A DNA stretch of 64,000 nucleotides from the sequence record NC_048047.1. One strand, written 5' to 3'. A program made the translations under genes and the position numbers. Below, piece after piece: positions 5,142 to 58,148 of the stretch; within the stretch, counting starts at the first letter, position 1, and every line of letters starts with the position of its first letter. A model generated the notes under the pieces. That model had not been told where the DNA came from, ran no database searches, and was given only the letters and a program-made list of their open reading frames with translations.

Positions 5142-5219
5142 TGGCGGCCCCGGCGGGAATCGAACCCGCGACCTCTGCTTTCGGAAAACAGCGCTCTTGT
5201 TCCGCTGAGCTACGGGGCC
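5142..5219 (-). tRNA. tRNA-Arg(CCG)
   Basis: reverse complement GGCCCCGTAGCTCAGCGGAACAAGAGCG CTGTT TTCCGAA AGCAG AGGTCGCGGGTTCGATTCCCGCCGGGGCCGCCA; cloverleaf, anticodon CCG, encoded CCA. Confidence 0.9.
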
Positions 5220-5220
5220 A

Positions 5221-5295
5221 TGGCGTGCCCGGCCGGAATCAAACCGGCATCCGGCGCTTAGAAGGCGCTTGCTCTCTTCGTTGAGCTACGGGCAC
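5221..5295 (-). tRNA. tRNA-Arg(TCT)
   Basis: reverse complement GTGCCCGTAGCTCAACGAAGAGAGCA AGCGC CTTCTAA GCGCC GGATGCCGGTTTGATTCCGGCCGGGCACGCCA; anticodon TCT, encoded CCA, T-loop variant TTTGATT. Confidence 0.85.
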
Positions 5296-11301: not shown

Positions 11302-11960
11302 TTGAACATCATCGGCTACATCGTCCTCGCCGTGGCTATCGCCAGCGTGATCATCTGGTGGGTGAAGACCACCAGCGACTACGAGGCCAAGTTCAAGATC
11401 GCCGTCGACGCCAAGGGCGTGCCGGAAGTCTACTCGCTGGCGTTCTTCATCAAGAACATGCGCCAGGAGTTCGTCACCGATCTGACGAATCCCGAGGAAA
11501 GCCGGATCAGCAACCCGACCGCCTATCAGGCGCGCCTGGGCCAAGCCGCCTCGGCCCTCACTCTGTCGGCCGGCGCCGTCGATCGCGCCATCCGCGCTGA
11601 CAACGGCGAGGTCCTGGCCGCTGCCCTGCTGCTGGCCGAAAGCCTCAAGGCCGTCGCCGAGGTCAAGAAGCACACCAATCCGTGACAAGCTGCGCCTGCT
11701 CCGAGAAGAAGCGACCGCTGCCGACGGCACTGCCGGAGGGCTCAAACGAGCGCCCCCGGCAATGGTTCGTCCTGCGGCGCAACGAGAGCGCCAGCGCCTT
11801 CAACGGCTACCGCCGGCAGTGGTCGGACAAGTCCTATGTGCAGTGTCGCGTCTGTGGCCGCGCCTGGGACACCAAGGCTGCCTACGTGGCCGACCTGCCC
11901 AACTGCGAATACTTCCCCGAGCGGGTCGCTCCCGCTGTCGAACCCTGGACCGACCAATGA
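11302..11960 (+). CDS. membrane-anchored protein (11302-11685) and zinc-finger protein (11682-11960)
   Basis: N-terminal TM; CRVCGRAW motif; overlapping stop and start. Confidence 0.65.
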
Positions 11961-12364
11961 TCACGCTGCCCGAGCCCCTCAAGCCCTGTCCGTTCTGCGG
12001 CGGTCCCTTCGCGATCAGCCAGGAACCTCACGACAATCATCCAATTGCGGGGATGTACTACATCTACCATACCGAGCGCACGACGCCGCAGCGGCAGCAC
12101 TGCCGGATCACCGTCGACAACCACTTCCACTCGGTCGAGGAGGCTGTGACGTTCTGGAACGGCCGCCACGTCTCGGCCGAGCAGATCATCCTGCCCAAGA
12201 TCAAGGTCGCCGAGCTTTGCTACAGCATGGGCTGGACCGCCGGCTATGGGCAGGCCCTGGTCGAGAAGGGCCTGTGCTTGTCCGACGCCTGGGACCTTGA
12301 CAAGCCCGAAGCCATCGCTCGCCTCCAGGCCGGAGGCGAAGACCCTGGAGAGGAGACGCCATGA
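11957..12364 (+). CDS. Lar-like (restriction alleviation) protein
   Basis: LKPCPFCGG...EEAVTFWNGR, characteristic Lar family pattern. Confidence 0.6.
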   Translation: MITLPEPLKPCPFCGGPFAISQEPHDNHPIAGMYYIYHTERTTPQRQHCRITVDNHFHSVEEAVTFWNGRHVSAEQIILPKIKVAELCYSMGWTAGYGQALVEKGLCLSDAWDLDKPEAIARLQAGGEDPGEETP

Positions 12365-23249: not shown

Positions 23250-24348
23250 ATGAAAGAGCTTCACCACCAGGACCTGCACGCGGTAACCTCCGCCACCGGC
23301 AAGAGCCGTCTCGTGTTCGGCTCGCCAGCCGACGCCAAGGCGCGCGCCGAGCAGCTATCGCGCCTGGAAGACGGCTCCTTGGTCCAGACGTGGCAGGTCA
23401 GCGACGTCTATCACATCCTGCACGACCTCGATCCAGGCCCCGCTGAGCGCCGGCGCGCGATCAACACCGTCACCATCCTGGGGCAGGTGGCCAAGGCCTC
23501 TCCGCTCACCGTCTATAGGGCTCCTGGCGATGCGCGTCCGGTTGAGTCAGACGCCTCGCGCGACGTCGCCGAGGCGGGCCTGCGCATCGACGCTGGCATG
23601 ATCATCCATAAGCTCAAGAACGGCCTCTCGCCCGCGACCCTGTCCCAGCGGCAGATCAACACCCTTGTCGACGCCTGGGCTCTGATGATCCGCGACATGG
23701 GCCGCCTGCACGACCTGGAACTGATGCAGGACGCCTAAGGCGCCGCGTCGCTCCGCCCCGGCATTAACCTTAACGAGAGACGCCCCGTGACCAACAGCTT
23801 CTACACCGAAGACGGCGACTACGATGACGAGCGTGAGGCCCACCGCGAGGGCATGCTGGGCTTCTTCCGCGAGGCCGAACAGGAGATCGCCAAGCTGGCC
23901 CCGCCGATCGGCCGCGCGCTGAACGAGGCCAGCTACACCATGGGCGAGATCAATCTGTGGATTGATCAGGAAGGCGGCATCTCCACCCCCGCCATCATCC
24001 AGGCCTGGGCTTTGGTGGAGACCCTGCGCCGCAACGGTGGCCAGTTCCCCGCCAAGCTGCGGATGTAGTCCCATGAGCAACGCCCGCACCAGCGGCTACG
24101 TCCAGGAGATCGAGGACGCCCGCGCCACGCTGTTGATCGCCGAACGTGACGCCTTCAACACCGACCTCTTCGAAGACGCCTTGGCCGACGACAACCTCAA
24201 GCGCGAGGTCGCCAAGGGCATCGACGCGATGGTCCAGTCTGGCATCTGGTTCAGCGACGCGGGGCTTCACGACGCCATCCAGGCGTGGTCCCTGGTCGAG
24301 GCCATCCGACGCAACGGCGGCGTCTATCCGCCGGAGCTTGAGGCATGA
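23250..24348 (+). CDS. hypothetical proteins (23250-23738, 23787-24068, 24073-24348); last two are tandem paralogues
   Basis: IIQAWALVETLRRNGGQFP versus AIQAWSLVEAIRRNGGVYP. Confidence 0.75.
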
Positions 24349-25928
24349 TGTCCTGGCCCGAGACCTACAGCCTCACCCGTGAGGAGATGTTGGCCTTCGT
24401 CAAGCAGCATGACGCCTATTCGGAGGCCTTCCGCTCGGCCTTTCTGGGCATCCTGGCCGCCAGCGCCAGTGATCTGCGCGTGAATATCTTGGGCCTGTCA
24501 CGCACCGGGCGCCGCGCCGACGGCCTCTGCTATCTGGGCCACATCACCGGCGCCGACGAGCGCCTACTGATCCGCTGCTTCCATGGCGTGCGCTTTGGCG
24601 ATACCCCGCCGGTGCTGACCGAAGAGGGCAGCAACGTGCTGCACTTCATCGCCCAGTTCTATCCCGACGAGATCAACGACCACATCGGTCCCTTCAGCAA
24701 GGTCTATGCGCACCTACGCGCGCCGCCCAAGCCCAAGGCCGAGAAGAAGCCCAAGAAGGATAAGACCGATGTCGTGGTTTGACGACTTCAAGGCGTGGCT
24801 GAGCTACACCCGTCAGCACAACAACCCCAGCCAGGGCGAATTTCGCATCCACCAGTTCGCTCCCGATCGCTTCGTGGTCCAGCTTCACAATGGTGAAGCC
24901 TGGAAGGGGCTGACCGAGGAAGGCAAAATCTCCGGCTACCGTTTCATCAAGCACTACGAGACCCTGGCCCAGGCTGTCGAGGCCCTGGCTTTGCAGCGCG
25001 CCCGCTGGTCGTCCCTGTTCGAGGGTGAGATCGAACGTCTGCTGGGCAGCGAGGTCTCCTACTATCCCGAGGGCCTGCATCCCGTGCGCAAGCACCGGGG
25101 GCGCTCCTGGAAGGTCGAAAAGCGCGCTTTGGAAGTGGCCCTCAAGGGCTTCGAGTAAGTTCCCGCGTTGACGCCCATCGTGGCGCCATGATAGCCAAGA
25201 CGTCATAGAAAAGGAATCGTCATGCCCTGGTGGTGGCCCTTCAAAAGCCGGTTGGAAGTGCAGGAGTTTGTCCACGTCCGCACGCCCCAATCCTACGATG
25301 TCCGGGTCGTTCAGGTCGACGACGAGACCTTCTACGTCGAGGCCTATGTCAACGGCGTCTGGCGGCGTCTGCTCTCCATGCGCCACACCGACTGGCGTCT
25401 GACCCTGGCCAGCGGCAAGGCCTGGAAAACCTTCGAGGAGGCCAAGGCCGCCGCCGAGGCCTTTACGGCCTATCGTGTCGCTTGGATCGCCAAGGAAACC
25501 TCCAGGCTGCGCGAGCACTGCAACACCTTCTATCCGACCGAATACGTGCGCGAGCCTGATTACGCGCATGTCAACCATGAGGCCCAGGCGGTCGACAACT
25601 TCCGTCTGAGCTACGGATGAGGAACCGCGCTCACCAAGTCCTGGCCCTGCTCGCCGACGCCTCCGATGAAGGTTTCGACGACATCCTGTGCGACGGCGCC
25701 TGCTATGTCGGACACGTGCGCATCAGCCGAGGCACGGTGACAGAGCTTCTGATCCACATGGCCATCTCGCGCTCCGATGAGGAGACCGAGCGCTACACGA
25801 TCAACAGCACGGGCCTTGCCATTCACCGTCGGCCGGCCCTGGCGCCAGACATCCTCAAGGCGATCGGCCAGGGCATCGCGTTCACGATCGACGCCGAGGA
25901 CCAGATCAAGGTCCTGGACTATCCTTAA
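24345..25928 (+). CDS. hypothetical genes (24345-24782, 24769-25158, 25222-25620, 25617-25928)
   Basis: coupled ORFs; promoter TTGACG at 25168 upstream of 25222. Confidence 0.7.
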
Positions 25929-25946
25929 ACCCTGCAAGGAGCACGC

Positions 25947-26684
25947 ATGCCCCAGACCATGAACGACCTGCTTGAAGCCGTCCCTGCCGGATCGCTGGAA
26001 CGCCATCTGCTCAACCAGATGCAGGACAAATCGATGCTGCTGCGCGAGGCGACCTATCTGAAGCTGGCGGGTGATCAGTACACCTACATTCAGGAAGGCT
26101 GGCTGCCCGGCGTGGCGTTCATGGGCGCCTCGGAGACGCCCTCGTCCGGCGATGGCGTACTGAACCCCCGCTCCGAGACCCTGATCCCCTACGTTCAACG
26201 CGACGAACATCTGCCCCGCCTGATCGAACGCGATGTGATCATCGGCGGTAACGGCGATGGTTTCGGCCTCTATGACCGCCTGCTTCCGCTCCAGATCATC
26301 AAGGCCCCCGACAACGTCTTCACGCCGGCCGACCTCCAGGCGACGATCGACGCGGTCGACGGCCCCACTCACGTCTACATGACGCAAGGCAAGTTCGACG
26401 CCCTGGTCGCCGCCGAGGTGATCGTCGATGGACGATTGGTCGACAACGAAGACCTGGGCATCCTGATCGCGTCCGATGGCCTTGGCCTCAACTATGCCGA
26501 GATCGACCACGCGATCGTGGTGCTCAACATGGGCGAAGCCGGCGTCGTCATCCTCTACAACGATCCGCCGTACGTCGAAGACCAGTTCGCCGCCTGGGAC
26601 GTGTCGCTGGCCGTGATGAGCGGGCGGGCGGTGGCGCGCTACGAGGACGTCAAGATCATCGAGCCGGCGGTCGCGCTGGTCTGA
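25947..26684 (+). CDS. shortened major-capsid-protein-like paralogue (HK97 fold)
   Basis: ordered motifs GDQYTYIQEGWLPGVAF, GVLNPRSETL, IDAVDGPTHVYM, IVVLNMGEAGV, WDVSLAVMSGRAVARYEDVK resemble a phage MCP family (recalled, not searched); SD AAGGAG. Confidence 0.6.
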   Translation: MPQTMNDLLEAVPAGSLERHLLNQMQDKSMLLREATYLKLAGDQYTYIQEGWLPGVAFMGASETPSSGDGVLNPRSETLIPYVQRDEHLPRLIERDVIIGGNGDGFGLYDRLLPLQIIKAPDNVFTPADLQATIDAVDGPTHVYMTQGKFDALVAAEVIVDGRLVDNEDLGILIASDGLGLNYAEIDHAIVVLNMGEAGVVILYNDPPYVEDQFAAWDVSLAVMSGRAVARYEDVKIIEPAVALV

Positions 26685-26686
26685 TC

Positions 26687-28751
26687 ATGACCAAGATGCT
26701 GGTGCTCGAACAGGCGATCGAACGCTTCCCCGTCCTGCTCCTCCTGGCGCAGGGCGTGGGACGCTGGACGCGTCTGCGCGACACTAGCATTGACGAGCCC
26801 ACCCTGTCGGCGCTGGTGACCGAGGGCGTCGTCGAGGTTGGGCGCTACAAGCCTGACCAGCGGGTGCGTGGCCGCACGCGGACCTTCCGGGCGCTGGCCC
26901 TCACCGCCAAGGGCGAACTGCTGTCGGCCATGCTGCGCGACGCCTTCCGCGAGCACAATCTGGCCTGGAGCTATGGTCCTGACGACGGCGTGGGGCGTGT
27001 GGCCATGCGCGCCGACTGGGGCCAGCCCAAGATCGAGTACGTCGCTGACGGATACCTGGGTCACCGGCGCAAGGTGATCACCGCCCGGCCCGACAATCAC
27101 AAGACCAAGATGAAGAAAGCCGCCCAACAGGCCCTGGCCAAGTGGCGTCTATGGCAGAGAGCACCGACATGAGCGATTACGAGCGTCAATTCGAGGAACA
27201 GTTCGACGACCTGGAGGTCGACCGTCGCCGTGCGCGCAGCCTGATCGACGACTTCGCCACGCACGCCGTGCCCGAGGACAAGAAGGATGCGGTCGACAAG
27301 CTGATCGGGCTGGCCAACTACTTCGATCACCTGGAGATCAAGCTGGACCTGGAGACGGCGATCGCCGCCTGGGCGCTCGTTGAGGAGGCGCTGCTGTGCG
27401 GCCCCGAGGAGATCGACGACCTCATCCAAGACATCGCGGCGGGCTAAGATGCAGACCGGTATCGTCGATCGCACCTATGAGACCCGCAAGGAATACTGGG
27501 TCGTGCGAGGCTTCTCCAAGAGGTCCAACTGCTACGTCTACCCCAATCATGGCTGGTCCTATACCTCCTGGACCCGCACCGTCGGCGACACCTATGACAC
27601 CCTGGAACAGGCCCGCAGGGGCATCCAGGGCGGCTATATCGAGGACATGATCGAGACCCAGCAGGTCGTCGACATCGAGTTCCTGCACTACAAGCGCGTC
27701 CGCCAGATCGCCGAGCACGTCGAGGTCTTCGCCTTCCGCGCCGATGGCGAGCCATCGACCCTGGCCACGCCAACCGTGGTCGTCGAGAACTGGACGCTAC
27801 GGCCGGACGACTACATCGGCATCGGAAGCGAAGACAACAGCGACGTCGCCATCTATGGTCGCGTCACCGCCTTGCGCGACGGCAAGGCCTATATCGACGT
27901 CATCAACGGCGGTTGGATCATGGTTGTGCGCATGGACGGCGACCAGACCGTCATCGACGCCGAATCCGGCTGCTGCCAGGGCGCCGATGAAGGCGAAGAC
28001 ACCAGGGTCGGCAGACCCGTGCGCGTCCTATTCCAGGGCGTGCCCGACCCGCATCAAGACCCCGAGTGCTACACCACTCAGATGGACGCGTGGCGTGACC
28101 AGCAGGAGGCGAAGGGCGCATGATCGAGATCGCTCACTATCGGCATCCCGCGCAAAGCACCCGCTGGGAAACGGATTTCTATGTCTTCGCCAGGGTCGAG
28201 TTCCCTTCGAGCCAGGGCAAGCCGATCTTCGAGGAAGTCGTCTGGGGCGCCGACTTCGCCAGGACCGGATGGCGCAAGGTCAATGCTGAAGGCGTCAGTC
28301 CGGTCGGGTTCCAGCGCCGTGAAGATGCCGACAAGGACGTGATGTCCGATCGCGCGCGCTGGTTCAACGGCCAGGAACTCACCGCCGTCCATGATCTGCG
28401 CTTCCTCAAGCGCACCGTCGTCACCGCCACCTATTATGAGGACGTGCAATGATCGACGAGATCGAGGTGATCCTGCGCACCTACCACAAGTCCGGCCGCG
28501 ATGGCGATCGGGCCACACGCGACAAGCCCTATCGCGACTACGAGATCGTGCTGCGGCGCCCCGTCGCCGAACTCGAAGTCCCCGTCCGCCTCTTCGATGG
28601 ATATGACAGTTTCAACGTTTCGATCCGCTCTGATCAGTACCGCCTCGCCGAGGCCCTGGCAAACCAGTTGGCCGACCTCTTCCAGTCAGCCGTCATCCGC
28701 GAAGACTATGAGCCTCAGGTCACGACAACCTGGGTCAAACGAGAACAATAA
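26687..28751 (+). CDS. hypothetical genes (26687-27172, 27169-27447, 27449-28123, 28120-28452, 28449-28751)
   Basis: coupled ORFs. Confidence 0.7.
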
Positions 28752-28761
28752 GGGAAACCCC

Positions 28762-29367
28762 ATGGACCGTCGTTCATTCCTCGCCGCCGGCTTTGCCGCC
28801 GCCCTGGCGCCGGCGATCGCCCAGGCCTATCCGCTCACCGATCCAACCAAGCTGATCGACAGCTTCCTGATCGACCGCGTCACCAGCGGTGATCTGGCCT
28901 TCAAGCCCACGACGCCGGCCATGCTCTCGCTGGCCCGCAACATGACCAGCCGTCTGTTCATGCAGCCGGTCGACACCACCTCCTACCGCCTCTCGGACTG
29001 GGGTGTGCGGCGCGGCCATTTCTTGCTGGTGGATCGTTTGTTCGACCCCTCCAAGGGTGGCGCCAAGAAGCTGATCCGCGACGTCTACGAGCTTAGCGAG
29101 GAACACCACCGTGATCCCACCGGGCGACGGTTCATGTCCGTCGCCGTGGGCAAGGATCGCGATGTGATCGCCCGTATGCAGTCGCGTGATCGCGCGCCGG
29201 GCGGCATCGTCACCACCACCCTGACCCGCACCCAGGCCAAGCAGAACGACTGGCGCATGGCCTATCTGCGCGCTGGCCGCCTGCGCCCGTCGGGCTACCT
29301 GCACACCAGCGACATCCTGCTGCTGGAGCCGACGGCGGCCTTCCCAAAGCTGACGCGTGTGGCATGA
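28762..29367 (+). CDS. Tat-signal protein, paralogue family member 1
   Basis: MDRRSFLAAGFAAALAPAIAQA; C-terminal TLTRTQAKQNDWRMAYLRAGRLRP. Confidence 0.7.
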   Translation: MDRRSFLAAGFAAALAPAIAQAYPLTDPTKLIDSFLIDRVTSGDLAFKPTTPAMLSLARNMTSRLFMQPVDTTSYRLSDWGVRRGHFLLVDRLFDPSKGGAKKLIRDVYELSEEHHRDPTGRRFMSVAVGKDRDVIARMQSRDRAPGGIVTTTLTRTQAKQNDWRMAYLRAGRLRPSGYLHTSDILLLEPTAAFPKLTRVA

Positions 29368-29923: not shown

Positions 29924-30676
29924 ATGAACCTCACTCGTCGCGCCATTCTCGCCTCCGCTGGCATCGCCGGCGCCTTCTTTGTCATGCCGGCCATCGCCAA
30001 GGCGCCGATCAGCGAGCGCGTTGAAAAGTGGCTGGCCCAGATGGTCTATGGCGGCAACTTCTCGGTGCATGTCCAGGCGGTCGATCCCGAAGTGCTGGAA
30101 GCCTTGCGCGCTGGCGCGCTCGCCGAGCAGCATGACGCCTGGGTCCCGGACAGCCCCTCCAACGTCGTCACCATCTCCCGCCGCGACATGGTCCGCCTGA
30201 CGCCGCGCGGCGTCGAGATGGGGCAGGTGTTCCTGGCCGCCCGCCTGGGCCGGCATGCACGCTTCCTGATGGCCCAGGCGATCGACTCCAAGCCCGCCAA
30301 ACAAGGCTACGCCTACAAGGTCCTGCGCGGCAGCGAGGCTGAGAACGCCAACTTCAAGCGCGTGTTCGGCAAGCCATATTCCAACGGCGCCCTGCCGCGC
30401 ACGGTGTTGACGCAAGAGCAGGCGGCCAGGGGCGACTGGCGCATGGTCCTGCTGCGCGAGGCCTATCTGCGGCCCGCCGCCGCCGGTTCGACCCTCATCG
30501 CCCTGGAGCGCACGCCGGCAGGCGAGGACTGGTATCAGGCTTGCCTGATCGACCAGCAATACGATCGAGTCGAGGCGCGCCTGAAGAAGATGGGCATCAA
30601 ACCCGTCTTCGACATGAACAGGGCCGAGGCCTTCGCGGTCAACTTTGGTCGCGGCAAGATCGTGGCCGCCGGATGA
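29924..30676 (+). CDS. Tat-signal protein, paralogue family member 2
   Basis: MNLTRRAILASAGIAGAFFVMPAIAKA; VLTQEQAARGDWRMVLLREAYLRP. Confidence 0.7.
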   Translation: MNLTRRAILASAGIAGAFFVMPAIAKAPISERVEKWLAQMVYGGNFSVHVQAVDPEVLEALRAGALAEQHDAWVPDSPSNVVTISRRDMVRLTPRGVEMGQVFLAARLGRHARFLMAQAIDSKPAKQGYAYKVLRGSEAENANFKRVFGKPYSNGALPRTVLTQEQAARGDWRMVLLREAYLRPAAAGSTLIALERTPAGEDWYQACLIDQQYDRVEARLKKMGIKPVFDMNRAEAFAVNFGRGKIVAAG

Positions 30677-48499: not shown

Positions 48500-49222
48500 A
48501 TGCCGGTGCTCGCCAACGCCAAGCAGGAGCTTTACTGCAAGCACCGCGCCAACGGCTTTGTCCCCAAGAAGGCCGCCCAGGCCGCAGGCTACGCCACCGG
48601 CAGCGCCGTCTACCAGGGCCTGGAGGAAGACGCCGACGTCGTCGCCCGCATCCATGAACTGATCGACGAGCGCAATGAGGCCAAGGCCGCGCGCATGGCC
48701 GCCGCCCAGGCCAAGGCCCTGGCCGAAGGACACACCGTCGGCACCATGACCGGCGTCTCCCACGCCTGGGTCATCGAGCAGTTGAAGATGAACGCCGAGG
48801 ACGCGCGCGAGAGCGGCGACTTCAAGGAAAGCAACGCCTCCCTGAAGCTGATCGGCGAAGCCCTAGGCATGTGGGGCGGCGGGCTCGCCGGCAAGGACGG
48901 CGCAGGACCGGGCCTGCTCAACGGTTCGGGCGATGGCCCGATGCTGATCGACCTGGACTCGATCGACAAGCTGATCGGCGTCACCGACCAGTTTCACCAG
49001 ATCGCCCTGGCTCCGCCCGGCGAACTGTCCGTCGAGGACCGCGACATCGCCATGAACCTGATCGCCGGCCAAGGCTCCAAGAATCTGGCGGGCGATCGCC
49101 AGCTTTCCACCGGCAGTGAGACCGACGTGGCTCTGCAACTGCTCGACGCCCTCGACGATGGCGAGAGCGAAATCCCGGCGCGCGAGATCATCCCGCCGCC
49201 GCCTTACCAAGACGAGGACTAA
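48500..49222 (+). CDS. terS: terminase small subunit
   Basis: N-terminal KQELYCKHRANG...KAAQAAGYA HTH typical of TerS; upstream of TerL. Confidence 0.7.
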   Translation: MPVLANAKQELYCKHRANGFVPKKAAQAAGYATGSAVYQGLEEDADVVARIHELIDERNEAKAARMAAAQAKALAEGHTVGTMTGVSHAWVIEQLKMNAEDARESGDFKESNASLKLIGEALGMWGGGLAGKDGAGPGLLNGSGDGPMLIDLDSIDKLIGVTDQFHQIALAPPGELSVEDRDIAMNLIAGQGSKNLAGDRQLSTGSETDVALQLLDALDDGESEIPAREIIPPPPYQDED

Positions 49223-49615: not shown

Positions 49616-52432
49616 GTGACCCTCGCTTCCCATAAGACCGCCCTCTCGCCCTATCCCCATGAGGAGCGCGCCAAGCGCCGCGCCGGTGTGCGCCGTATGC
49701 GCAAGCTCGCCGAGGACATCCGGGCCGATCACGTCCGGGACCGCGAGCAGGACCCCCAGCGCGCGGCTGCCGCCACCGCCATCACCGGCGTGACCGAGCC
49801 CCATCACCAAGTCGCCCTGCTGGAGCAGATCGCCGACAAAATCCAGACCGAGCACCTGGACAAGCTTTATCCGCTGGCCCGTGACGACTTCTCCGCCTTC
49901 TGCGAGGTCATCAGCCCCGAGGAGCCGCCCGAGAGCCCCTGGCACATCTGGCTGACCAACTTCCTGCAAGAGGTCGAGCTTTCGCCCGATCTCAACAAGG
50001 TGGTGCTCAACGTGCCGCCCGGCCACGCCAAGCCCCTGCACGAGGACACCCTGGTGCTGATGGGCGATGGCGCCTATCGGCCGCTCAAGGACATCCAGGT
50101 CGGCGACCGCGTCTGGACCCACGCCGGCCGCGCCCGTCCCGTCACCGCCGTCCACGAGCAGGGCAAGCTCTCCACCGTCGAGATCGTCACCGAGGCGGGC
50201 CGCATTGTGCGCGCCGCCCCCGACCACCCGTTCCTGGTCAAGCTGGGGACCAAGGACGACGGGACCCCGATCGCCGAATGGATCAACGCCGGCGACCTGC
50301 GGCCGGGCATGCCCGTGGTGATATCGGCCCACAAGCCGCCGAGCGTCGAGCACCGTCACTATGACGGCGACCACACCACGGCCGAGACCTACAACAAGCC
50401 CCTGCGCCGGGCCGAGGCCCTGGGCTACATGGCGCTGGGCGGGGCGCTGCACTGGCAGAAGTCCAAGACCCAGGTCACCCCCTCGCCCGACTTCCGTCTG
50501 TCGACCCACAAGCGCGCGCTGATGAAGCACATCGTCAAGCTGGTCAAGACCGGCCTTGGCCACCACATCAGCGTCTGCAAGGTCGCCTCCCAGAACACCT
50601 TCGTCGCCCGCCTGGGCGTCAAGGGTTTCCGTGATCTCAACGCCGGCGACTGGTTCACCTACGAGCCGGAGAAGCGCCGCGTCCCGCCGTGCATCTTCAC
50701 CGCCAGCAAGGACGAGATCGCCGCCTTCCTGGGCGCGGCCTTCTCCCTGCGCGGCGAGGTCATCCGCCGGCTGCGGGGCAAGAACCTGCGCCTCTACCAT
50801 CGCTCTATGGACCTGCTTCTGGACGTGCAGAAGTTGTGCGCCACGCTAGGGGCCGCAGGAAGCCTCGACAGGGGCGATCCTGACTTCGGGGGCCGACCCT
50901 GCTTGAACCTCGACTTCGCCGCTGTGGCAGCCCTCCAGGCGGCCGGAGTGAGCTTCGATGGCGAGACCGACACCGACCTCGTCAATCAGCCGCCCTTCAC
51001 CATGCTGATCCCGCGTCCGAGCGACACCGACGCGGTCGTCTCGGTGCTGCCGGCCAAGAAGGCCCGCTGCCTGTGCCTGACCGTCGAGGAGGACCACAGC
51101 TTCACCGCCGAGACCCTGGTGGTCAAGAACTCCACCTATGCCTCGCGCCTGTTCGTGGCGTGGCGCCTGGGGCGTGACCCCAACCAGCGCATCATCGGCG
51201 GCGGCCACAGTCAGAACTTCGTCGAGAACGAGTTCTCCTCGAAAATCCGCAACATCGTCACCTCGCCGGAATTCCAGCGCGTCTTCCCTGGCATCACCGT
51301 CGACCACCAGACCAACGCCAAGCAGCAGTGGGCGATCGCCGGCTACAAGGGCCAGTACGTGGCGCGCGGCGTGGGCCAGGGCATCCACGGTTTCCGCGCC
51401 ACCTTCATCTGCGTCGATGACCCCTACTCCAAGATCGAGGACGCCAACAGCCCGGTTCACCGGCGCAAGGTCGAGCAGTGGTTCGACGCCGACATTGGTT
51501 CGCGCGCCCTGCCCAACTGCAAGACCTTCCTGATCATGACCCGCTTCCATGGTGAGGATTTGACTAATCACCTGGAGGAGATGAACAAGGTCCTCCCCGA
51601 CAATGCAAAGTGGAAGATCGTTACTGTTCCGGCCATCTGCTTTGATGAAGAAACAGACCTTCTAGGCCGCAAAATCGGTGAGTTTTTGTGGGATTACTAT
51701 CCGTTGTCCTACTTCGTTGACAAGAAGATTCAGTTTGGATTTCTGGGTTTCGCCCTCACCTACCAACAGGTGTCGTCTGCCGCAAATCCCGACAACATCG
51801 CCAGCAAGTTCAACTTCTACGATTCCCTGCCCCACGAGTCGCCTGAAGTTAAGGCCCGCGCCCCTCGCGACCAGTTCGGCAGGCCGCAGATTAACGAGGG
51901 TGATTTTTACCGGCGCACCATCGTCTCGGTCGATACCGCCTCCAAGACCACCGAACGCGCCGACTACACGGTCGTGCAGGTCTGGCGCGAGGATTTCCGG
52001 GGCAAGCACTACCTCGTCCACCAGGACCGCCGGAAGGTCGAGTTCAACGACCTGATCTCGATGATCGAGGCGCCGGCCATCAAGTACCGGGCCGACCAAA
52101 TCCTCGTCGAGGACAAGGGCTCGGGCACCCAGTACCTGCAAAACCGGGGCTCGACCGACAATCAGAAGCGTCAGGCGCCCTGTCCGCTGGTGGCGGTCAA
52201 TCCTGGCGTGGCCGGCAAGAGCTTCCGTTTTGACGGTGTCACGCCCATGATCGAGGGCGGCGATGTCTGGCTGCCCAAGGATGCGCCCTGGATCGAGCAG
52301 CTTCTGGTCGAGATCGGCCAGTTCCCCGACAGCGCTCACGATGACCAAGTCGACGCCATGAGCCAGTACCTCAACCACGCCAAGAAGAACCGCACCCGCT
52401 ACGGCAGTCGCAAGATCACCAAGCACACGTAA
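49616..52432 (+). CDS. terL: terminase large subunit containing an intein
   Basis: Walker A PPGHAK/ST split by the intein; GVGQGIHGFRA, ICVDDP Walker B, LIMTRFH, nuclease SVDTA, LVEDKGSG, HDDQVDAMSQ. Confidence 0.95.
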   Translation: MTLASHKTALSPYPHEERAKRRAGVRRMRKLAEDIRADHVRDREQDPQRAAAATAITGVTEPHHQVALLEQIADKIQTEHLDKLYPLARDDFSAFCEVISPEEPPESPWHIWLTNFLQEVELSPDLNKVVLNVPPGHAKPLHEDTLVLMGDGAYRPLKDIQVGDRVWTHAGRARPVTAVHEQGKLSTVEIVTEAGRIVRAAPDHPFLVKLGTKDDGTPIAEWINAGDLRPGMPVVISAHKPPSVEHRHYDGDHTTAETYNKPLRRAEALGYMALGGALHWQKSKTQVTPSPDFRLSTHKRALMKHIVKLVKTGLGHHISVCKVASQNTFVARLGVKGFRDLNAGDWFTYEPEKRRVPPCIFTASKDEIAAFLGAAFSLRGEVIRRLRGKNLRLYHRSMDLLLDVQKLCATLGAAGSLDRGDPDFGGRPCLNLDFAAVAALQAAGVSFDGETDTDLVNQPPFTMLIPRPSDTDAVVSVLPAKKARCLCLTVEEDHSFTAETLVVKNSTYASRLFVAWRLGRDPNQRIIGGGHSQNFVENEFSSKIRNIVTSPEFQRVFPGITVDHQTNAKQQWAIAGYKGQYVARGVGQGIHGFRATFICVDDPYSKIEDANSPVHRRKVEQWFDADIGSRALPNCKTFLIMTRFHGEDLTNHLEEMNKVLPDNAKWKIVTVPAICFDEETDLLGRKIGEFLWDYYPLSYFVDKKIQFGFLGFALTYQQVSSAANPDNIASKFNFYDSLPHESPEVKARAPRDQFGRPQINEGDFYRRTIVSVDTASKTTERADYTVVQVWREDFRGKHYLVHQDRRKVEFNDLISMIEAPAIKYRADQILVEDKGSGTQYLQNRGSTDNQKRQAPCPLVAVNPGVAGKSFRFDGVTPMIEGGDVWLPKDAPWIEQLLVEIGQFPDSAHDDQVDAMSQYLNHAKKNRTRYGSRKITKHT
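50033..51130 (+). mobile_element. 366-aa intein (Pro1 start, block-F Cys, class-3-like) with degenerate LAGLIDADG region
   Basis: PLHEDTLVLMGDG...IQVGDRV (block A), APDHPF (block B), CLCLTVEEDHSF (block F), VVKN/S end. Confidence 0.9.
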
Positions 52433-56963: not shown

Positions 56964-56993
56964 AAGGCCCGCCTCCCCGGCGGGCCTTTTCTT
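56964..56993 (+). terminator. rho-independent terminator
   Basis: AAGGCCCGCC-loop-GGCGGGCCTT-TTCTT. Confidence 0.85.
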
Positions 56994-57006
56994 GACCACC
57001 GCCTGG

Positions 57007-57037
57007 GGTTAACCTTAACGTCGCCTTAAGGTTAACC
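57007..57037. promoter_or_regulatory. palindromic operator containing CtrA-type TTAA-N7-TTAA
   Basis: GGTTAACCTTAA-CGTCGCC-TTAAGGTTAACC. Confidence 0.85.
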
Positions 57038-57145
57038 CGCCCAGGCCGGCGCCCAGGCGAAAAAGATTGCGAGAAACCTGTTGACACGCATGGAAGCCCT
57101 ATGCGAGAACAGGGCACCAATTCAACGCCAGCCGGGAGACACCCC

Positions 57146-58148
57146 ATGGCCCTTGTCACCGAGTCCTTTGTCGTCGATATCGACTGCACCCGCGCCCTGA
57201 CTGCCGCCGAGCGGCGAGGACTGGCCGGCGCCATCGCCCAGGTCCTGGGCGTCAATATTGATCGTGTCGAGCCCGAACCGGGCGGTTTCCTGACCGCCAA
57301 TATCGGCCGCGTGCGCCCGGCCGGCATGGTCGGCGCCTCAGGTCAAGAGGCTCGGATCAAGACCGAGGCCCTGACCAGCCGCGACCATGACGCGCCCGTC
57401 GCCCTGACCCTGGAGGCTGGCGAGCGCGTCGATGTCATCGCCCGCTTCTACTGCATGGCCGATGCTGAGACCTATCTGAACGAAAACCCCGACATCGACC
57501 CGGTGTCGCTGAACCTGGGCTGCTATGGCATTGACGCGCCGTTTGGCGTGGCCAGCGACGCGGACGGCGACAAGCTCCTCTATGAGCTGGGCTATCGCCT
57601 GCACGCCACGGGCGGCGGGTCGTGGTCCTTCACCGATCCGAAGGGCTATCTCTGGGACGGCGGCGGCAAGCGTGAGGCCGTGGTCATGATCGCCCTGAAA
57701 CAAGCCGCCGACGCCGAGGAGGCCTAAGACCATGACCGGTTACACGATCAAGCTCGAAGTTCAGGTCAACCCGGCTGACAGCCTGGAGCAGGCGCGCAAG
57801 GACGTCGAGACCGCCATTATCAAGGCCGATCTTCCGGCCTGGATGGAATGGATGATCATCGACGCCGCGCCCCTGGCGCCGGTGATCGCGCCGGCCACGC
57901 GCTGGGCGACCTTCGTCGGTCAGGCCTGGATCAACGGCCACACGATGGAAGTGGACGACAGCCGCGTGAGCTACGGTGTCACTGACGAGGAGTTTGACGA
58001 AAACGGCGGGGACGAGCCGGCCGACTTCGACGCCCTGGCCCAGGCCGCCCGCGCTCCCGACTGGGTGCGCAACTGGTCAGGCCCCTTCGACATCTACATC
58101 TCGGACATTCCAGACGGGCAGGACCCGGATATTCCGGTTTTCGGCTAA
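57146..58148 (+). CDS. two early-type hypothetical proteins (57146-57727, 57732-58148)
   Basis: promoter TTGACA at 57081, RBS GGGAGACACCCC. Confidence 0.8.

What the first reader, a model, noticed from the sequence alone, without database searches (positions are those of the whole stretch)
25947..26684. Shortened major-capsid-like paralogue stranded in the accessory region
Seen: a 245-aa ORF with a strong SD and no portal, protease or tail genes anywhere in the window. Its motifs occur in the order I recall for an HK97-fold capsid family: GxxYxYxxExxLPGVAF, GVxNPxxExL, IDAVDxPTHxxM, IxxxxxGExGV, WxVxLAxxxGRAxARxxxxK. The region expected to hold the long spine helix appears largely deleted. 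Inference: a non-assembling capsid mimic. It could be a decoy for capsid-sensing defences (CapRel-type systems are known to sense MCP), a dominant-negative weapon against co-infecting phages, or a modulator of head length.
Basis: partly seen in the sequence, partly recalled or inferred. Interest (0 to 1): 0.8.

Follow-up and report, generated by a model that had tools for sequence, protein, structure and literature searches.

The report
Trimmed capsid-protein paralogue in accessory arm
A Caulobacter jumbo phage carries, far from its head genes, a second, trimmed copy of its capsid shell protein; selection has kept it in a few related phages but most lack it, so it is probably an optional accessory protein and not a building block, and its job is unknown.

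Summary
The window is Caulobacter phage CcrBL9 (record ~248001-312000). The ORF at 25947-26684 is gp461, 245 aa, deposited as 'hypothetical protein'. gp461 is homologous along its whole length to the phage's own major capsid protein (MCP) gp123, which is 311 aa and 217 kb away (30% identity; profile-profile E 3e-42). It is confidently predicted to have an HK97 fold.

It is about 70 residues shorter through at least eight in-frame deletions. The spine helix is shortened (24 to 14 residues), not deleted. The strand and short helix before it and the tip of the C-terminal hairpin are gone, and with them two near-invariant family motifs. gp461 keeps 26 of 58 family-conserved positions and misses both curated MCP models.

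It is not an orphan. Two metagenomic relatives (228 and 289 aa) share its deletions and its gene neighbourhood. Synonymous sites are saturated while protein similarity persists, which indicates purifying selection. Eight of nine Bertelyvirus genomes lack it cleanly.

Best reading: a dispensable, fast-evolving, selectively maintained MCP-derived accessory protein that no longer builds shells. Decoy, competitor-poison and head-length roles remain untested. Separately, related phages encode full-length MCP paralogues with twin-arginine export signals.

The parts
25929..26686 (+). One-gene segment present in CcrBL9 but absent from CcrSC and BL47, where the gp460 and gp462 homologues abut
   Evidence: Annotation and alignment of the CcrSC locus. 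BL47 locus. Local tblastn finds no MCP-like remnant in either locus.
25936..25941 (+). Shine-Dalgarno sequence AAGGAG, five bases upstream of the start codon
   Evidence: Direct reading of the sequence.
25947..26684 (+). gp461 (AXQ69485.1 / YP_009810115.1; UniProt A0A385EEN3): 245-aa trimmed HK97-fold paralogue of the major capsid protein
25947..26048 (+). Residues 1-34: three N-arm helices, retained
   Evidence: Secondary structure of the AF2 models of gp461 and of reference MCP P0025. 30 of 36 reference positions are occupied.
26049..26183 (+). Residues 35-79: E-loop region carrying the YxYxxEGxLPGVAF and NPxxE motifs. Fully retained and the best-conserved segment
   Evidence: 45 of 45 reference positions occupied, 42% identity to full-length MCPs. 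The PHROG 212 'major head protein' hit covers residues 1-79.
26184..26243 (+). Residues 80-99: shortened P-domain strand (5 residues against 10) and shortened spine helix (14 against 24). The short helix and the acidic motif between them are deleted
26244..26561 (+). Residues 100-205: A-domain. Both helices and the IDxVDGPTH motif are kept; one hairpin and several loops are deleted
   Evidence: Deletions at reference positions 127-134, 150-153, 203-213, 224-229 and 237-242. Secondary structure.
26562..26681 (+). Residues 206-245: C-terminal P-domain hairpin with its tip removed, and the final strand with the W...SGRAxAR motif
   Evidence: Deletion at reference positions 271-281; the overlapping deletion 275-284 is present in both relatives. 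Secondary structure.
25617..25928 (+). gp460, upstream neighbour of unknown function. Homologues lie near the MCP-like gene in L005 and abut the gp462 homologue in CcrSC and BL47
26687..27172 (+). gp462, downstream neighbour starting two bases after the gp461 stop. Unknown function; found only in Bertelyvirus genomes

Best explanation
gp461 belongs to an old, fast-evolving and dispensable paralogue lineage of the epsilon15-gp7-type (Pfam PF20911) HK97-fold major capsid protein (MCP). The lineage lives in the accessory gene arm of phiCbK-like jumbo phages. Selection has kept it as a compact, foldable, trimmed HK97 domain. The parts removed are those that in capsids sit at the far end of the P-domain and in A-domain loops. 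The N-arm, E-loop region and A-domain helices are kept. Shown: homology, fold, the deletion map, clade membership, shared neighbourhood, the purifying-selection signature and patchy distribution. Inferred: it no longer builds the shell, and it acts as a soluble MCP mimic that occupies some factor which normally binds MCP through the retained N-arm/E-loop face. That factor could be a host MCP sensor or a phage assembly factor.
For: 1. Homology runs along the full length to MCPs. 2. The HK97-fold model is confident and Foldseek agrees. 3. The P-domain elements are shortened together relative to the reference model: strand 10 to 5 residues, short helix lost, spine helix 24 to 14, and the C-terminal hairpin tip removed. 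This looks like trimming that preserves packing, not random decay. 4. At least eight deletions are all in frame. 5. Two relatives, P0003 (228 aa) and P0002 (289 aa), share the hairpin-tip and pre-spine deletions. They cluster with gp461 in 88 of 100 bootstraps and lie among homologues of the same neighbouring genes. 6. Between gp461 and P0003, third codon positions are at baseline (0.42 against 0.40) while positions 1 and 2 are well above it (0.49 and 0.57 against 0.30 and 0.27). 7. GC3 is 84.6%, like its neighbours and like gp123. 8. It has a strong SD and tight operon packing in all three genomes. 9. Shell-specific constraint is lost: 26 of 58 conserved positions are kept, and there is no Pfam or NCBIfam MCP hit. 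10. The same gene array holds a gene annotated as a Lar-like restriction alleviation protein.
Against: There are no expression, proteomic or interaction data. Only three sequences are known, even after exhaustive searches. The AF2 model was built on an alignment dominated by real MCPs, which may inflate its confidence. The tree grouping could be long-branch attraction. An intact ORF is weak evidence in a 64% GC genome: an antisense ORF of 299 aa overlaps the gene. Absence from 8 of 9 Bertelyvirus genomes shows the gene is dispensable. All neighbours are of unknown function, so the proposed partner is pure inference. The selection signature applies to the lineage as a whole, not necessarily to gp461 today.
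Confidence: 0.45

Rival explanations
1. It is a decaying relic of an old MCP duplication with no present function, still open by chance and because stop codons are rare at high GC.
For: gp461 has lost more than half of the family-conserved positions and gets no curated MCP model hit. It is cleanly absent from CcrSC, BL47 and the other Bertelyvirus genomes. Long spurious ORFs are common in this window. The remaining spine helix is only 13% identical to MCPs.
Against: All of the eight or more deletions are in frame. Three diverged lineages keep an end-to-end alignable ORF. Synonymous sites are saturated while positions 1 and 2 are conserved. The compact model is confident. The gene has a strong SD and tight packing. 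Phage genomes usually purge dead DNA, as the clean losses in relatives illustrate.
Confidence: 0.2
2. It is a minor virion component that co-assembles with gp123 at special positions, such as the caps or a vertex of the prolate head, in the way T4 gp24 relates to gp23.
For: It keeps an HK97 fold with the N-arm and E-loop, the elements that contact neighbouring subunits. MCP-derived vertex proteins are established in T4-like phages (my own knowledge).
Against: It is absent from 8 of 9 genomes of the same genus, whose MCPs are 99% identical. It lies 217 kb from the head module. It has lost the near-invariant strand-end and hairpin-tip motifs.
Confidence: 0.1
3. It is a dominant-negative subunit that poisons capsid assembly of co-infecting related phages, or that tunes the phage's own head length.
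For: The retained E-loop and N-arm could dock onto foreign capsomers, while the lost contacts would block lattice growth. This is inference.
Against: MCPs across this phage subfamily are 75-99% identical, so such a poison would hit the phage's own gp123 as well. Genus relatives lack the gene, so it cannot be required for head-length determination. There is no supporting context.
Confidence: 0.08
4. It forms its own small encapsulin-like shell or capsomer-like ring that serves as a compartment or platform.
For: The best solved structural matches are family-2 encapsulins of 244-302 aa, and its size is typical of minimal HK97-fold shells.
Against: The canonical MCP model matches the same encapsulins even better, so the likeness is a family trait. 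The contacts expected for shell closure are the parts that were lost. No recognisable cargo gene lies nearby.
Confidence: 0.05

Closest known systems
CcrBL9 gp123 and other epsilon15-gp7-type major capsid proteins (Pfam PF20911, NCBIfam NF045672, PHROG 212)
   Same: Homologous end to end, with the same HK97 fold and shared N-terminal, central and C-terminal motifs.
   Different: About 70 residues shorter. Keeps 26 of 58 conserved positions. Falls below all curated thresholds. Not in the head module and not a core gene.
P0003 (228 aa) and P0002 (289 aa) from uncultured phiCbK-like phage contigs L005 and L006
   Same: Nearest relatives, sharing the deletions, the accessory neighbourhood and tight operon packing.
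   Different: Only 31-35% identical by BLASTP. The slot among the neighbouring genes differs. P0002 is much less reduced and is still 38% identical to true MCPs.
Signal-peptide-bearing MCP paralogues such as CcrColossus gp036 (P0005) and P0004
   Same: Extra MCP-family genes of phiCbK-like phages located outside the head module. With gp461 as query they outrank canonical MCPs in HMMER.
   Different: They are full length, keep 42-49 of 58 conserved positions, pass the NCBIfam cutoff and carry twin-arginine-type N-termini. gp461 has no signal peptide.
T4 gp24, the vertex paralogue of MCP gp23 (my own knowledge; not retrieved as a hit)
   Same: An MCP duplicate retained within one phage genome.
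   Different: gp24 is a conserved structural gene in the head module. gp461 is patchy, remote from the head module and eroded at assembly contacts.
Family-2 encapsulin shell proteins (for example 6x8m, 9bje, 9bix)
   Same: Best solved structural matches, of similar size.
   Different: The resemblance is shared by the canonical MCP. There is no cargo context, and sequence identity is 16-18%.
Phage MCPs as triggers of CapRel, Avs7 and Dsr1 defences (bioRxiv 10.64898/2026.01.04.697583, read)
   Same: These systems show that MCP surfaces are sensed by host immunity, which makes an MCP mimic conceivable as a countermeasure.
   Different: That paper describes no MCP-like decoy; its uses of the word 'decoy' refer to mass-spectrometry databases. 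Nothing here links gp461 to any sensor.

Membership tests
Epsilon15-gp7-type HK97 major capsid protein (PF20911 / NF045672 / PHROG 212) | Significant sequence homology along the whole protein | tested here: met
   hhalign probability 100%, E 3.2e-42, 235 columns. BLASTP E 2e-19 against gp123.
Epsilon15-gp7-type HK97 major capsid protein (PF20911 / NF045672 / PHROG 212) | Reaches the curated family thresholds | tested here: not met
   No Pfam hit even at E 10. No NCBIfam hit at E 0.01, whereas gp123 scores 214.6 bits against a 75-bit cutoff. The PHROG 212 hit covers residues 1-79 only, E 4.7e-6.
Epsilon15-gp7-type HK97 major capsid protein (PF20911 / NF045672 / PHROG 212) | HK97 fold | tested here: met
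   AF2 pLDDT 89.4, pTM 0.88. Foldseek probability 1.00 to HK97, P4/P2 and encapsulin shells.
Epsilon15-gp7-type HK97 major capsid protein (PF20911 / NF045672 / PHROG 212) | Keeps the near-invariant family positions | tested here: not met
   26 kept, 21 substituted and 11 deleted out of 58 columns that are at least 90% conserved in 65 full-length MCPs.
Epsilon15-gp7-type HK97 major capsid protein (PF20911 / NF045672 / PHROG 212) | Encoded in the head-morphogenesis module beside the scaffold gene | tested here: not met
   gp123 sits beside scaffold gp122 at record 56-58 kb. gp461 is at 274 kb among genes of unknown function.
Epsilon15-gp7-type HK97 major capsid protein (PF20911 / NF045672 / PHROG 212) | Core gene present in all close relatives | tested here: not met
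   Present in 1 of 9 distinct Bertelyvirus genomes.
Epsilon15-gp7-type HK97 major capsid protein (PF20911 / NF045672 / PHROG 212) | Forms the virion shell | not testable with these tools
   Requires virion proteomics or a capsid map.
Short MCP-like accessory clade (gp461, P0003, P0002; proposed here) | Shared deletions at the pre-spine segment and the C-terminal hairpin tip | tested here: met
   In reference numbering, deletions overlap at about 94-98 and 275-281 in all three proteins.
Short MCP-like accessory clade (gp461, P0003, P0002; proposed here) | Monophyly and a shared gene neighbourhood | tested here: met
   Neighbour-joining bootstrap 88 of 100. Homologues of gp454-gp464 flank the gene in L005 and L006. 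The exact slot differs between genomes.
Encapsulin shell protein | Specific structural likeness beyond that of ordinary MCPs | tested here: not met
   The canonical MCP model hits the same encapsulins at lower E-values (1e-12 against 3e-8).
Encapsulin shell protein | Adjacent cargo gene | tested here: inconclusive
   The neighbours have no recognisable domains.
Anti-defence decoy or trigger mimic | Binds a host MCP sensor without activating it | not testable with these tools
   Only non-specific hallmarks are met: accessory location, patchy distribution and fast evolution.
T4 gp24-like vertex paralogue | Conserved together with the MCP inside the head module | tested here: not met

The most novel reading that the evidence does not exclude
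phiCbK-like jumbo phages have repeatedly turned their capsid protein into non-structural tools. One lineage is the trimmed cytoplasmic form (gp461, P0003, P0002). It would work as an MCP mimic that soaks up host sensors of capsid protein, or otherwise interferes with MCP-binding factors. A second lineage is exported to the periplasm through twin-arginine signals. If true, this would be the first phage-encoded capsid-fold decoy.
Probability: 0.15. Interest if true: 0.8.

Novelty: new variant of a known kind. Interest (0 to 1): 0.5.

Why it matters
HK97-fold proteins are almost always read as shell builders. Here a capsid-fold gene has left the head module, lost its lattice-contact motifs, stayed foldable and remained under selection. 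That would be a clear case of a capsid protein being reused for another purpose within a phage. If the role is immune evasion or interference, it adds a new class of counter-defence. If not, it still shows which parts of the fold can be trimmed while the predicted fold stays compact. GenBank and RefSeq call gp461 'hypothetical' and UniProt calls it 'Major capsid protein'; neither label describes it well.

Tried and rejected
1. Direct Pfam, PDB-sequence and NCBIfam searches with gp461 gave nothing useful. Only PHROGs gave a partial hit.
2. Searches for more clade members failed. This covers the word-indexed searches, IMG/VR and JGI metagenomes. The one metagenome hit was an ordinary MCP.
3. A special link to encapsulins was rejected after the canonical MCP control.
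4. Recent duplication of gp123 was rejected. gp461 is about equally distant (27-30%) from all MCPs of the group, and its closest relatives are other short forms.
5. Recent foreign acquisition was rejected on GC and GC3.
6. Neighbour-gene context gave no function. The promoter and terminator scan was uninformative.
7. Other 'second MCP-like places' occur in CcrPW, CcrRogue, BL64, BL57, Kabachok and Papperlapapp. I did not locate them; CcrPW 12-30 kb has none.
8. Literature searches found no report on gp461, on MCP decoys or on exported MCP paralogues.
That the deleted tips lie at one end of the P-domain is therefore inferred from topology, not measured.

Full report
IDENTITY OF THE WINDOW AND THE ORF

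Megablast places the window in Caulobacter phage CcrBL9 (MH588546.1 / NC_048047.1; 322,272 bp; Dolichocephalovirinae, Bertelyvirus), at about record positions 248001-312000. The ORF at 25947-26684 is annotated gp461 (AXQ69485.1), 'hypothetical protein', 245 aa. An AAGGAG sequence lies five bases before its ATG. The stop of gp460 is 18 bases upstream, and gp462 starts two bases after the gp461 stop.

The deposited annotation of the whole window lists no portal, protease or tail gene. It does list the small and large terminase genes (48500-49222 and 49616-52432) and the start of the terminal repeat.

HOMOLOGY TO THE CAPSID PROTEIN

The phage's real major capsid protein (MCP) is gp123, 311 aa, at record 56970-57905. 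It sits next to a scaffold protein (PHROG 206) and matches Pfam PF20911, NCBIfam NF045672 (214.6 bits) and PHROG 212.

- gp461 aligns to gp123 at 30% identity with 75 gap positions, E 2e-19.
- By tblastn it hits the annotated MCPs of about 88 phage records at 27-30% identity.
- A profile of gp461 and its two closest relatives aligns to a profile of 50 full-length MCPs with probability 100%, E 3.2e-42, across positions 8-242 against 6-304.
- gp461 itself gets no Pfam or NCBIfam hit and only a partial PHROG 212 hit over residues 1-79.
- A family profile reaches solved HK97-fold capsids 8cjz, 3j40 (epsilon15 gp7) and 3j4u.

FOLD AND DELETION MAP

AlphaFold2 with a 70-sequence family alignment gives a confident model of gp461 (pLDDT 89.4, pTM 0.88). 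Foldseek matches HK97-fold shells at probability 1.00, with family-2 encapsulins first, then P4/P2 and HK97. In BFVD the self-entry shows that UniProt already names the protein 'Major capsid protein'.

As a control, I modelled a full-length MCP, P0025, which is 75% identical to gp123 (pLDDT 91.0). It matches the same encapsulins with even lower E-values. The encapsulin likeness is therefore a trait of the family and is not specific to gp461.

The table compares the secondary-structure elements of the two models.

| Element | P0025 (reference MCP) | gp461 |
|---|---|---|
| Strand after the E-loop | 82-91 | 80-84 |
| Short helix | 92-98 | absent |
| Spine helix | 101-124 (24 residues) | 86-99 (14 residues) |
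| C-terminal hairpin | 267-274 / 279-292 | 209-211 / 214-223 |

The alignment places the gp461 deletions at reference positions 12-16, 83-102, 127-134, 150-153, 203-213, 224-229, 237-242 and 271-281, which is 71 residues in total.

By segment:
- The E-loop region (45 of 45 positions, 42% identity) and the A-domain helices (31 of 31 positions) are fully kept.
- The strand plus short helix is almost entirely gone (1 of 19 positions).
- The residual spine helix is the most divergent part (13% identity).

The big gap lies just before the helix, and the helix is shortened and eroded.

The three elements that make up the P-domain in HK97-fold proteins are all shortened at turn regions. I read this as coordinated trimming of one end of the P-domain.

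Of 58 columns that are at least 90% conserved among 65 full-length MCPs, gp461 keeps 26, substitutes 21 and lacks 11. The losses include an acidic motif at the strand end and a basic motif at the hairpin tip.

NOT AN ORPHAN: A SMALL CLADE

An exhaustive HMMER scan of 1.84 billion representatives found only 19 hits at E 1e-3 or better. The two best are P0002 (289 aa) and P0003 (228 aa, aligned end to end), both at E ~3e-17. Both come from metagenomic contigs made of long one-strand arrays of small unannotated genes.

- Locus L005 is syntenic with window 14-33 kb. Its neighbours are 22-90% identical, including the RNA ligase at 90%. L006 shares homologues of gp454, gp455 and gp463.
- The MCP-like gene sits in the same neighbourhood in each genome but not in the same slot.
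- In reference numbering, deletions overlap at about 94-98 and 275-281 in all three proteins. gp461 and P0003 share further deletions.
- The three cluster in 88 of 100 neighbour-joining bootstraps, with a long-branch caveat.
- P0002 is intermediate. It is about 38% identical to true MCPs and scores 50 bits against NF045672, below the cutoff.
- No further members turned up in IMG/VR, JGI metagenomes or a profile search.

SELECTION OR DECAY

An open 245-codon frame proves little at 64% GC; a 299-aa antisense ORF overlaps the gene. Stronger evidence comes from the following.

- All inferred deletions are in frame.
- The gene's GC1/GC2/GC3 values (69.5/36.6/84.6) match its neighbours and gp123.
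- In codon alignments of gp461 against P0003, third positions are at the composition baseline (0.42 against 0.40). First and second positions are far above baseline (0.49 and 0.57 against 0.30 and 0.27). The other pairs behave similarly. A neutrally drifting copy would have lost detectable similarity over that divergence.
- The lineage evolves faster than most neighbours: 34% amino-acid identity against 40-90%.

DISPENSABILITY

In CcrSC the gp460 and gp462 homologues overlap by one base, with nothing between them. BL47 has the same arrangement. Neither locus holds a remnant. With gp461 as query at E 10, every other Bertelyvirus record shows only its true MCP, although their MCPs are 99% identical to gp123. 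Homologues of gp462 exist only in this genus.

INTERPRETATION

- Shown: gp461 is a trimmed HK97-fold MCP paralogue of an old, selectively maintained but frequently lost accessory lineage.
- Inferred: it no longer builds shells, because it has lost conserved contact motifs and is neither core nor part of the head module. It probably acts through the retained N-arm/E-loop face as a soluble MCP mimic.
- The accessory location, patchy distribution and fast evolution fit a host-interaction or counter-defence gene. A gene annotated as a Lar-like restriction alleviation protein lies in the same array. MCP-sensing defences are documented.
- None of this is specific, and no MCP decoy has been reported in the papers searched.
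- A head-length role is unlikely, because genus relatives lack the gene.
- A dominant-negative role would also threaten the phage's own, highly conserved MCP.
- A pure relic is disfavoured by the selection signature but not excluded for gp461 itself.

SIDE OBSERVATION

Six full-length MCP homologues carry N-terminal extensions with twin-arginine-type signal features: CcrColossus gp036 (= P0005), P0004, P0007, P0008, P0012 and P0013. Of the two scored, P0004 and P0005 keep 42-49 of the 58 conserved positions and pass the NCBIfam cutoff. P0004 lies in an accessory array beside PolyA_pol, NAD synthase and 2OG-Fe(II) oxygenase genes. Colossus gp036 lies beside a transglutaminase-like peptidase that has a lipoprotein-type signal. 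With gp461 as query these proteins outrank canonical MCPs. MCP duplication outside the head module is therefore recurrent in this phage group.

LIMITS AND TRANSPARENCY

- The clade has only three members.
- There are no expression or virion data.
- The AF2 confidence leans on an MCP-rich alignment.
- The script printed a by-column table of conserved positions.

Noticed in passing
L004:7824-8789 (CcrColossus gp036 = P0005); also P0004 (L013:8001-9098), P0007, P0008, P0012, P0013: Full-length MCP homologues with N-terminal extensions of about 35-85 aa that look like twin-arginine export signals, encoded outside head modules. It is unexplained why a capsid-fold protein would be exported.
   Followed up: partly
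L004:7109-7750 (CcrColossus gp037): The transglutaminase-like cysteine peptidase next to gp036 starts with a lipoprotein-type signal (a hydrophobic stretch ending in a Cys lipobox). This suggests an exported two-gene module.
   Followed up: partly
window 28762-29367 (gp467) and 29924-30676 (gp470): Two paralogous genes of unknown function, both with twin-arginine-like N-termini. One L005 protein matches both of them.
   Followed up: no
window 24769-25158 and 25258-25620 (gp458, gp459); 23787-24068 and 24073-24348 (gp455, gp456): Tandem paralogue pairs just upstream of gp461. gp458 and gp459 both hit phrog_11634. gp455 and gp456 are both hit by single proteins of L005 and L006.
   Followed up: no
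window 11957-12364: RefSeq annotates a Lar-like restriction alleviation protein in the same one-strand gene array, 14 kb upstream of gp461.
   Followed up: no
CcrPW, CcrRogue, BL64, BL57, Brevundimonas phages Kabachok and Papperlapapp (records): Each record has a second place similar to the MCP besides the true MCP gene. These were not located; CcrPW 12-30 kb holds none. PHROG 31318 (147 aa, unknown function) matches the C-terminal half of gp123, so truncated MCP-like ORFs may be common.
   Followed up: partly
window 25947-26684: Database labels disagree. GenBank and RefSeq say 'hypothetical protein'; UniProt A0A385EEN3 says 'Major capsid protein'.
   Followed up: yes
window 5145-5295 (- strand): Two tRNA-Arg genes (annotated anticodons for TCT and CCG) on the opposite strand to the surrounding gene array.
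   Followed up: no
window 25611-26510 (- strand): A 299-aa antisense ORF overlaps gp461. It is typical of high-GC sequence and is a reminder that ORF length alone is no evidence of a gene here.
   Followed up: yes
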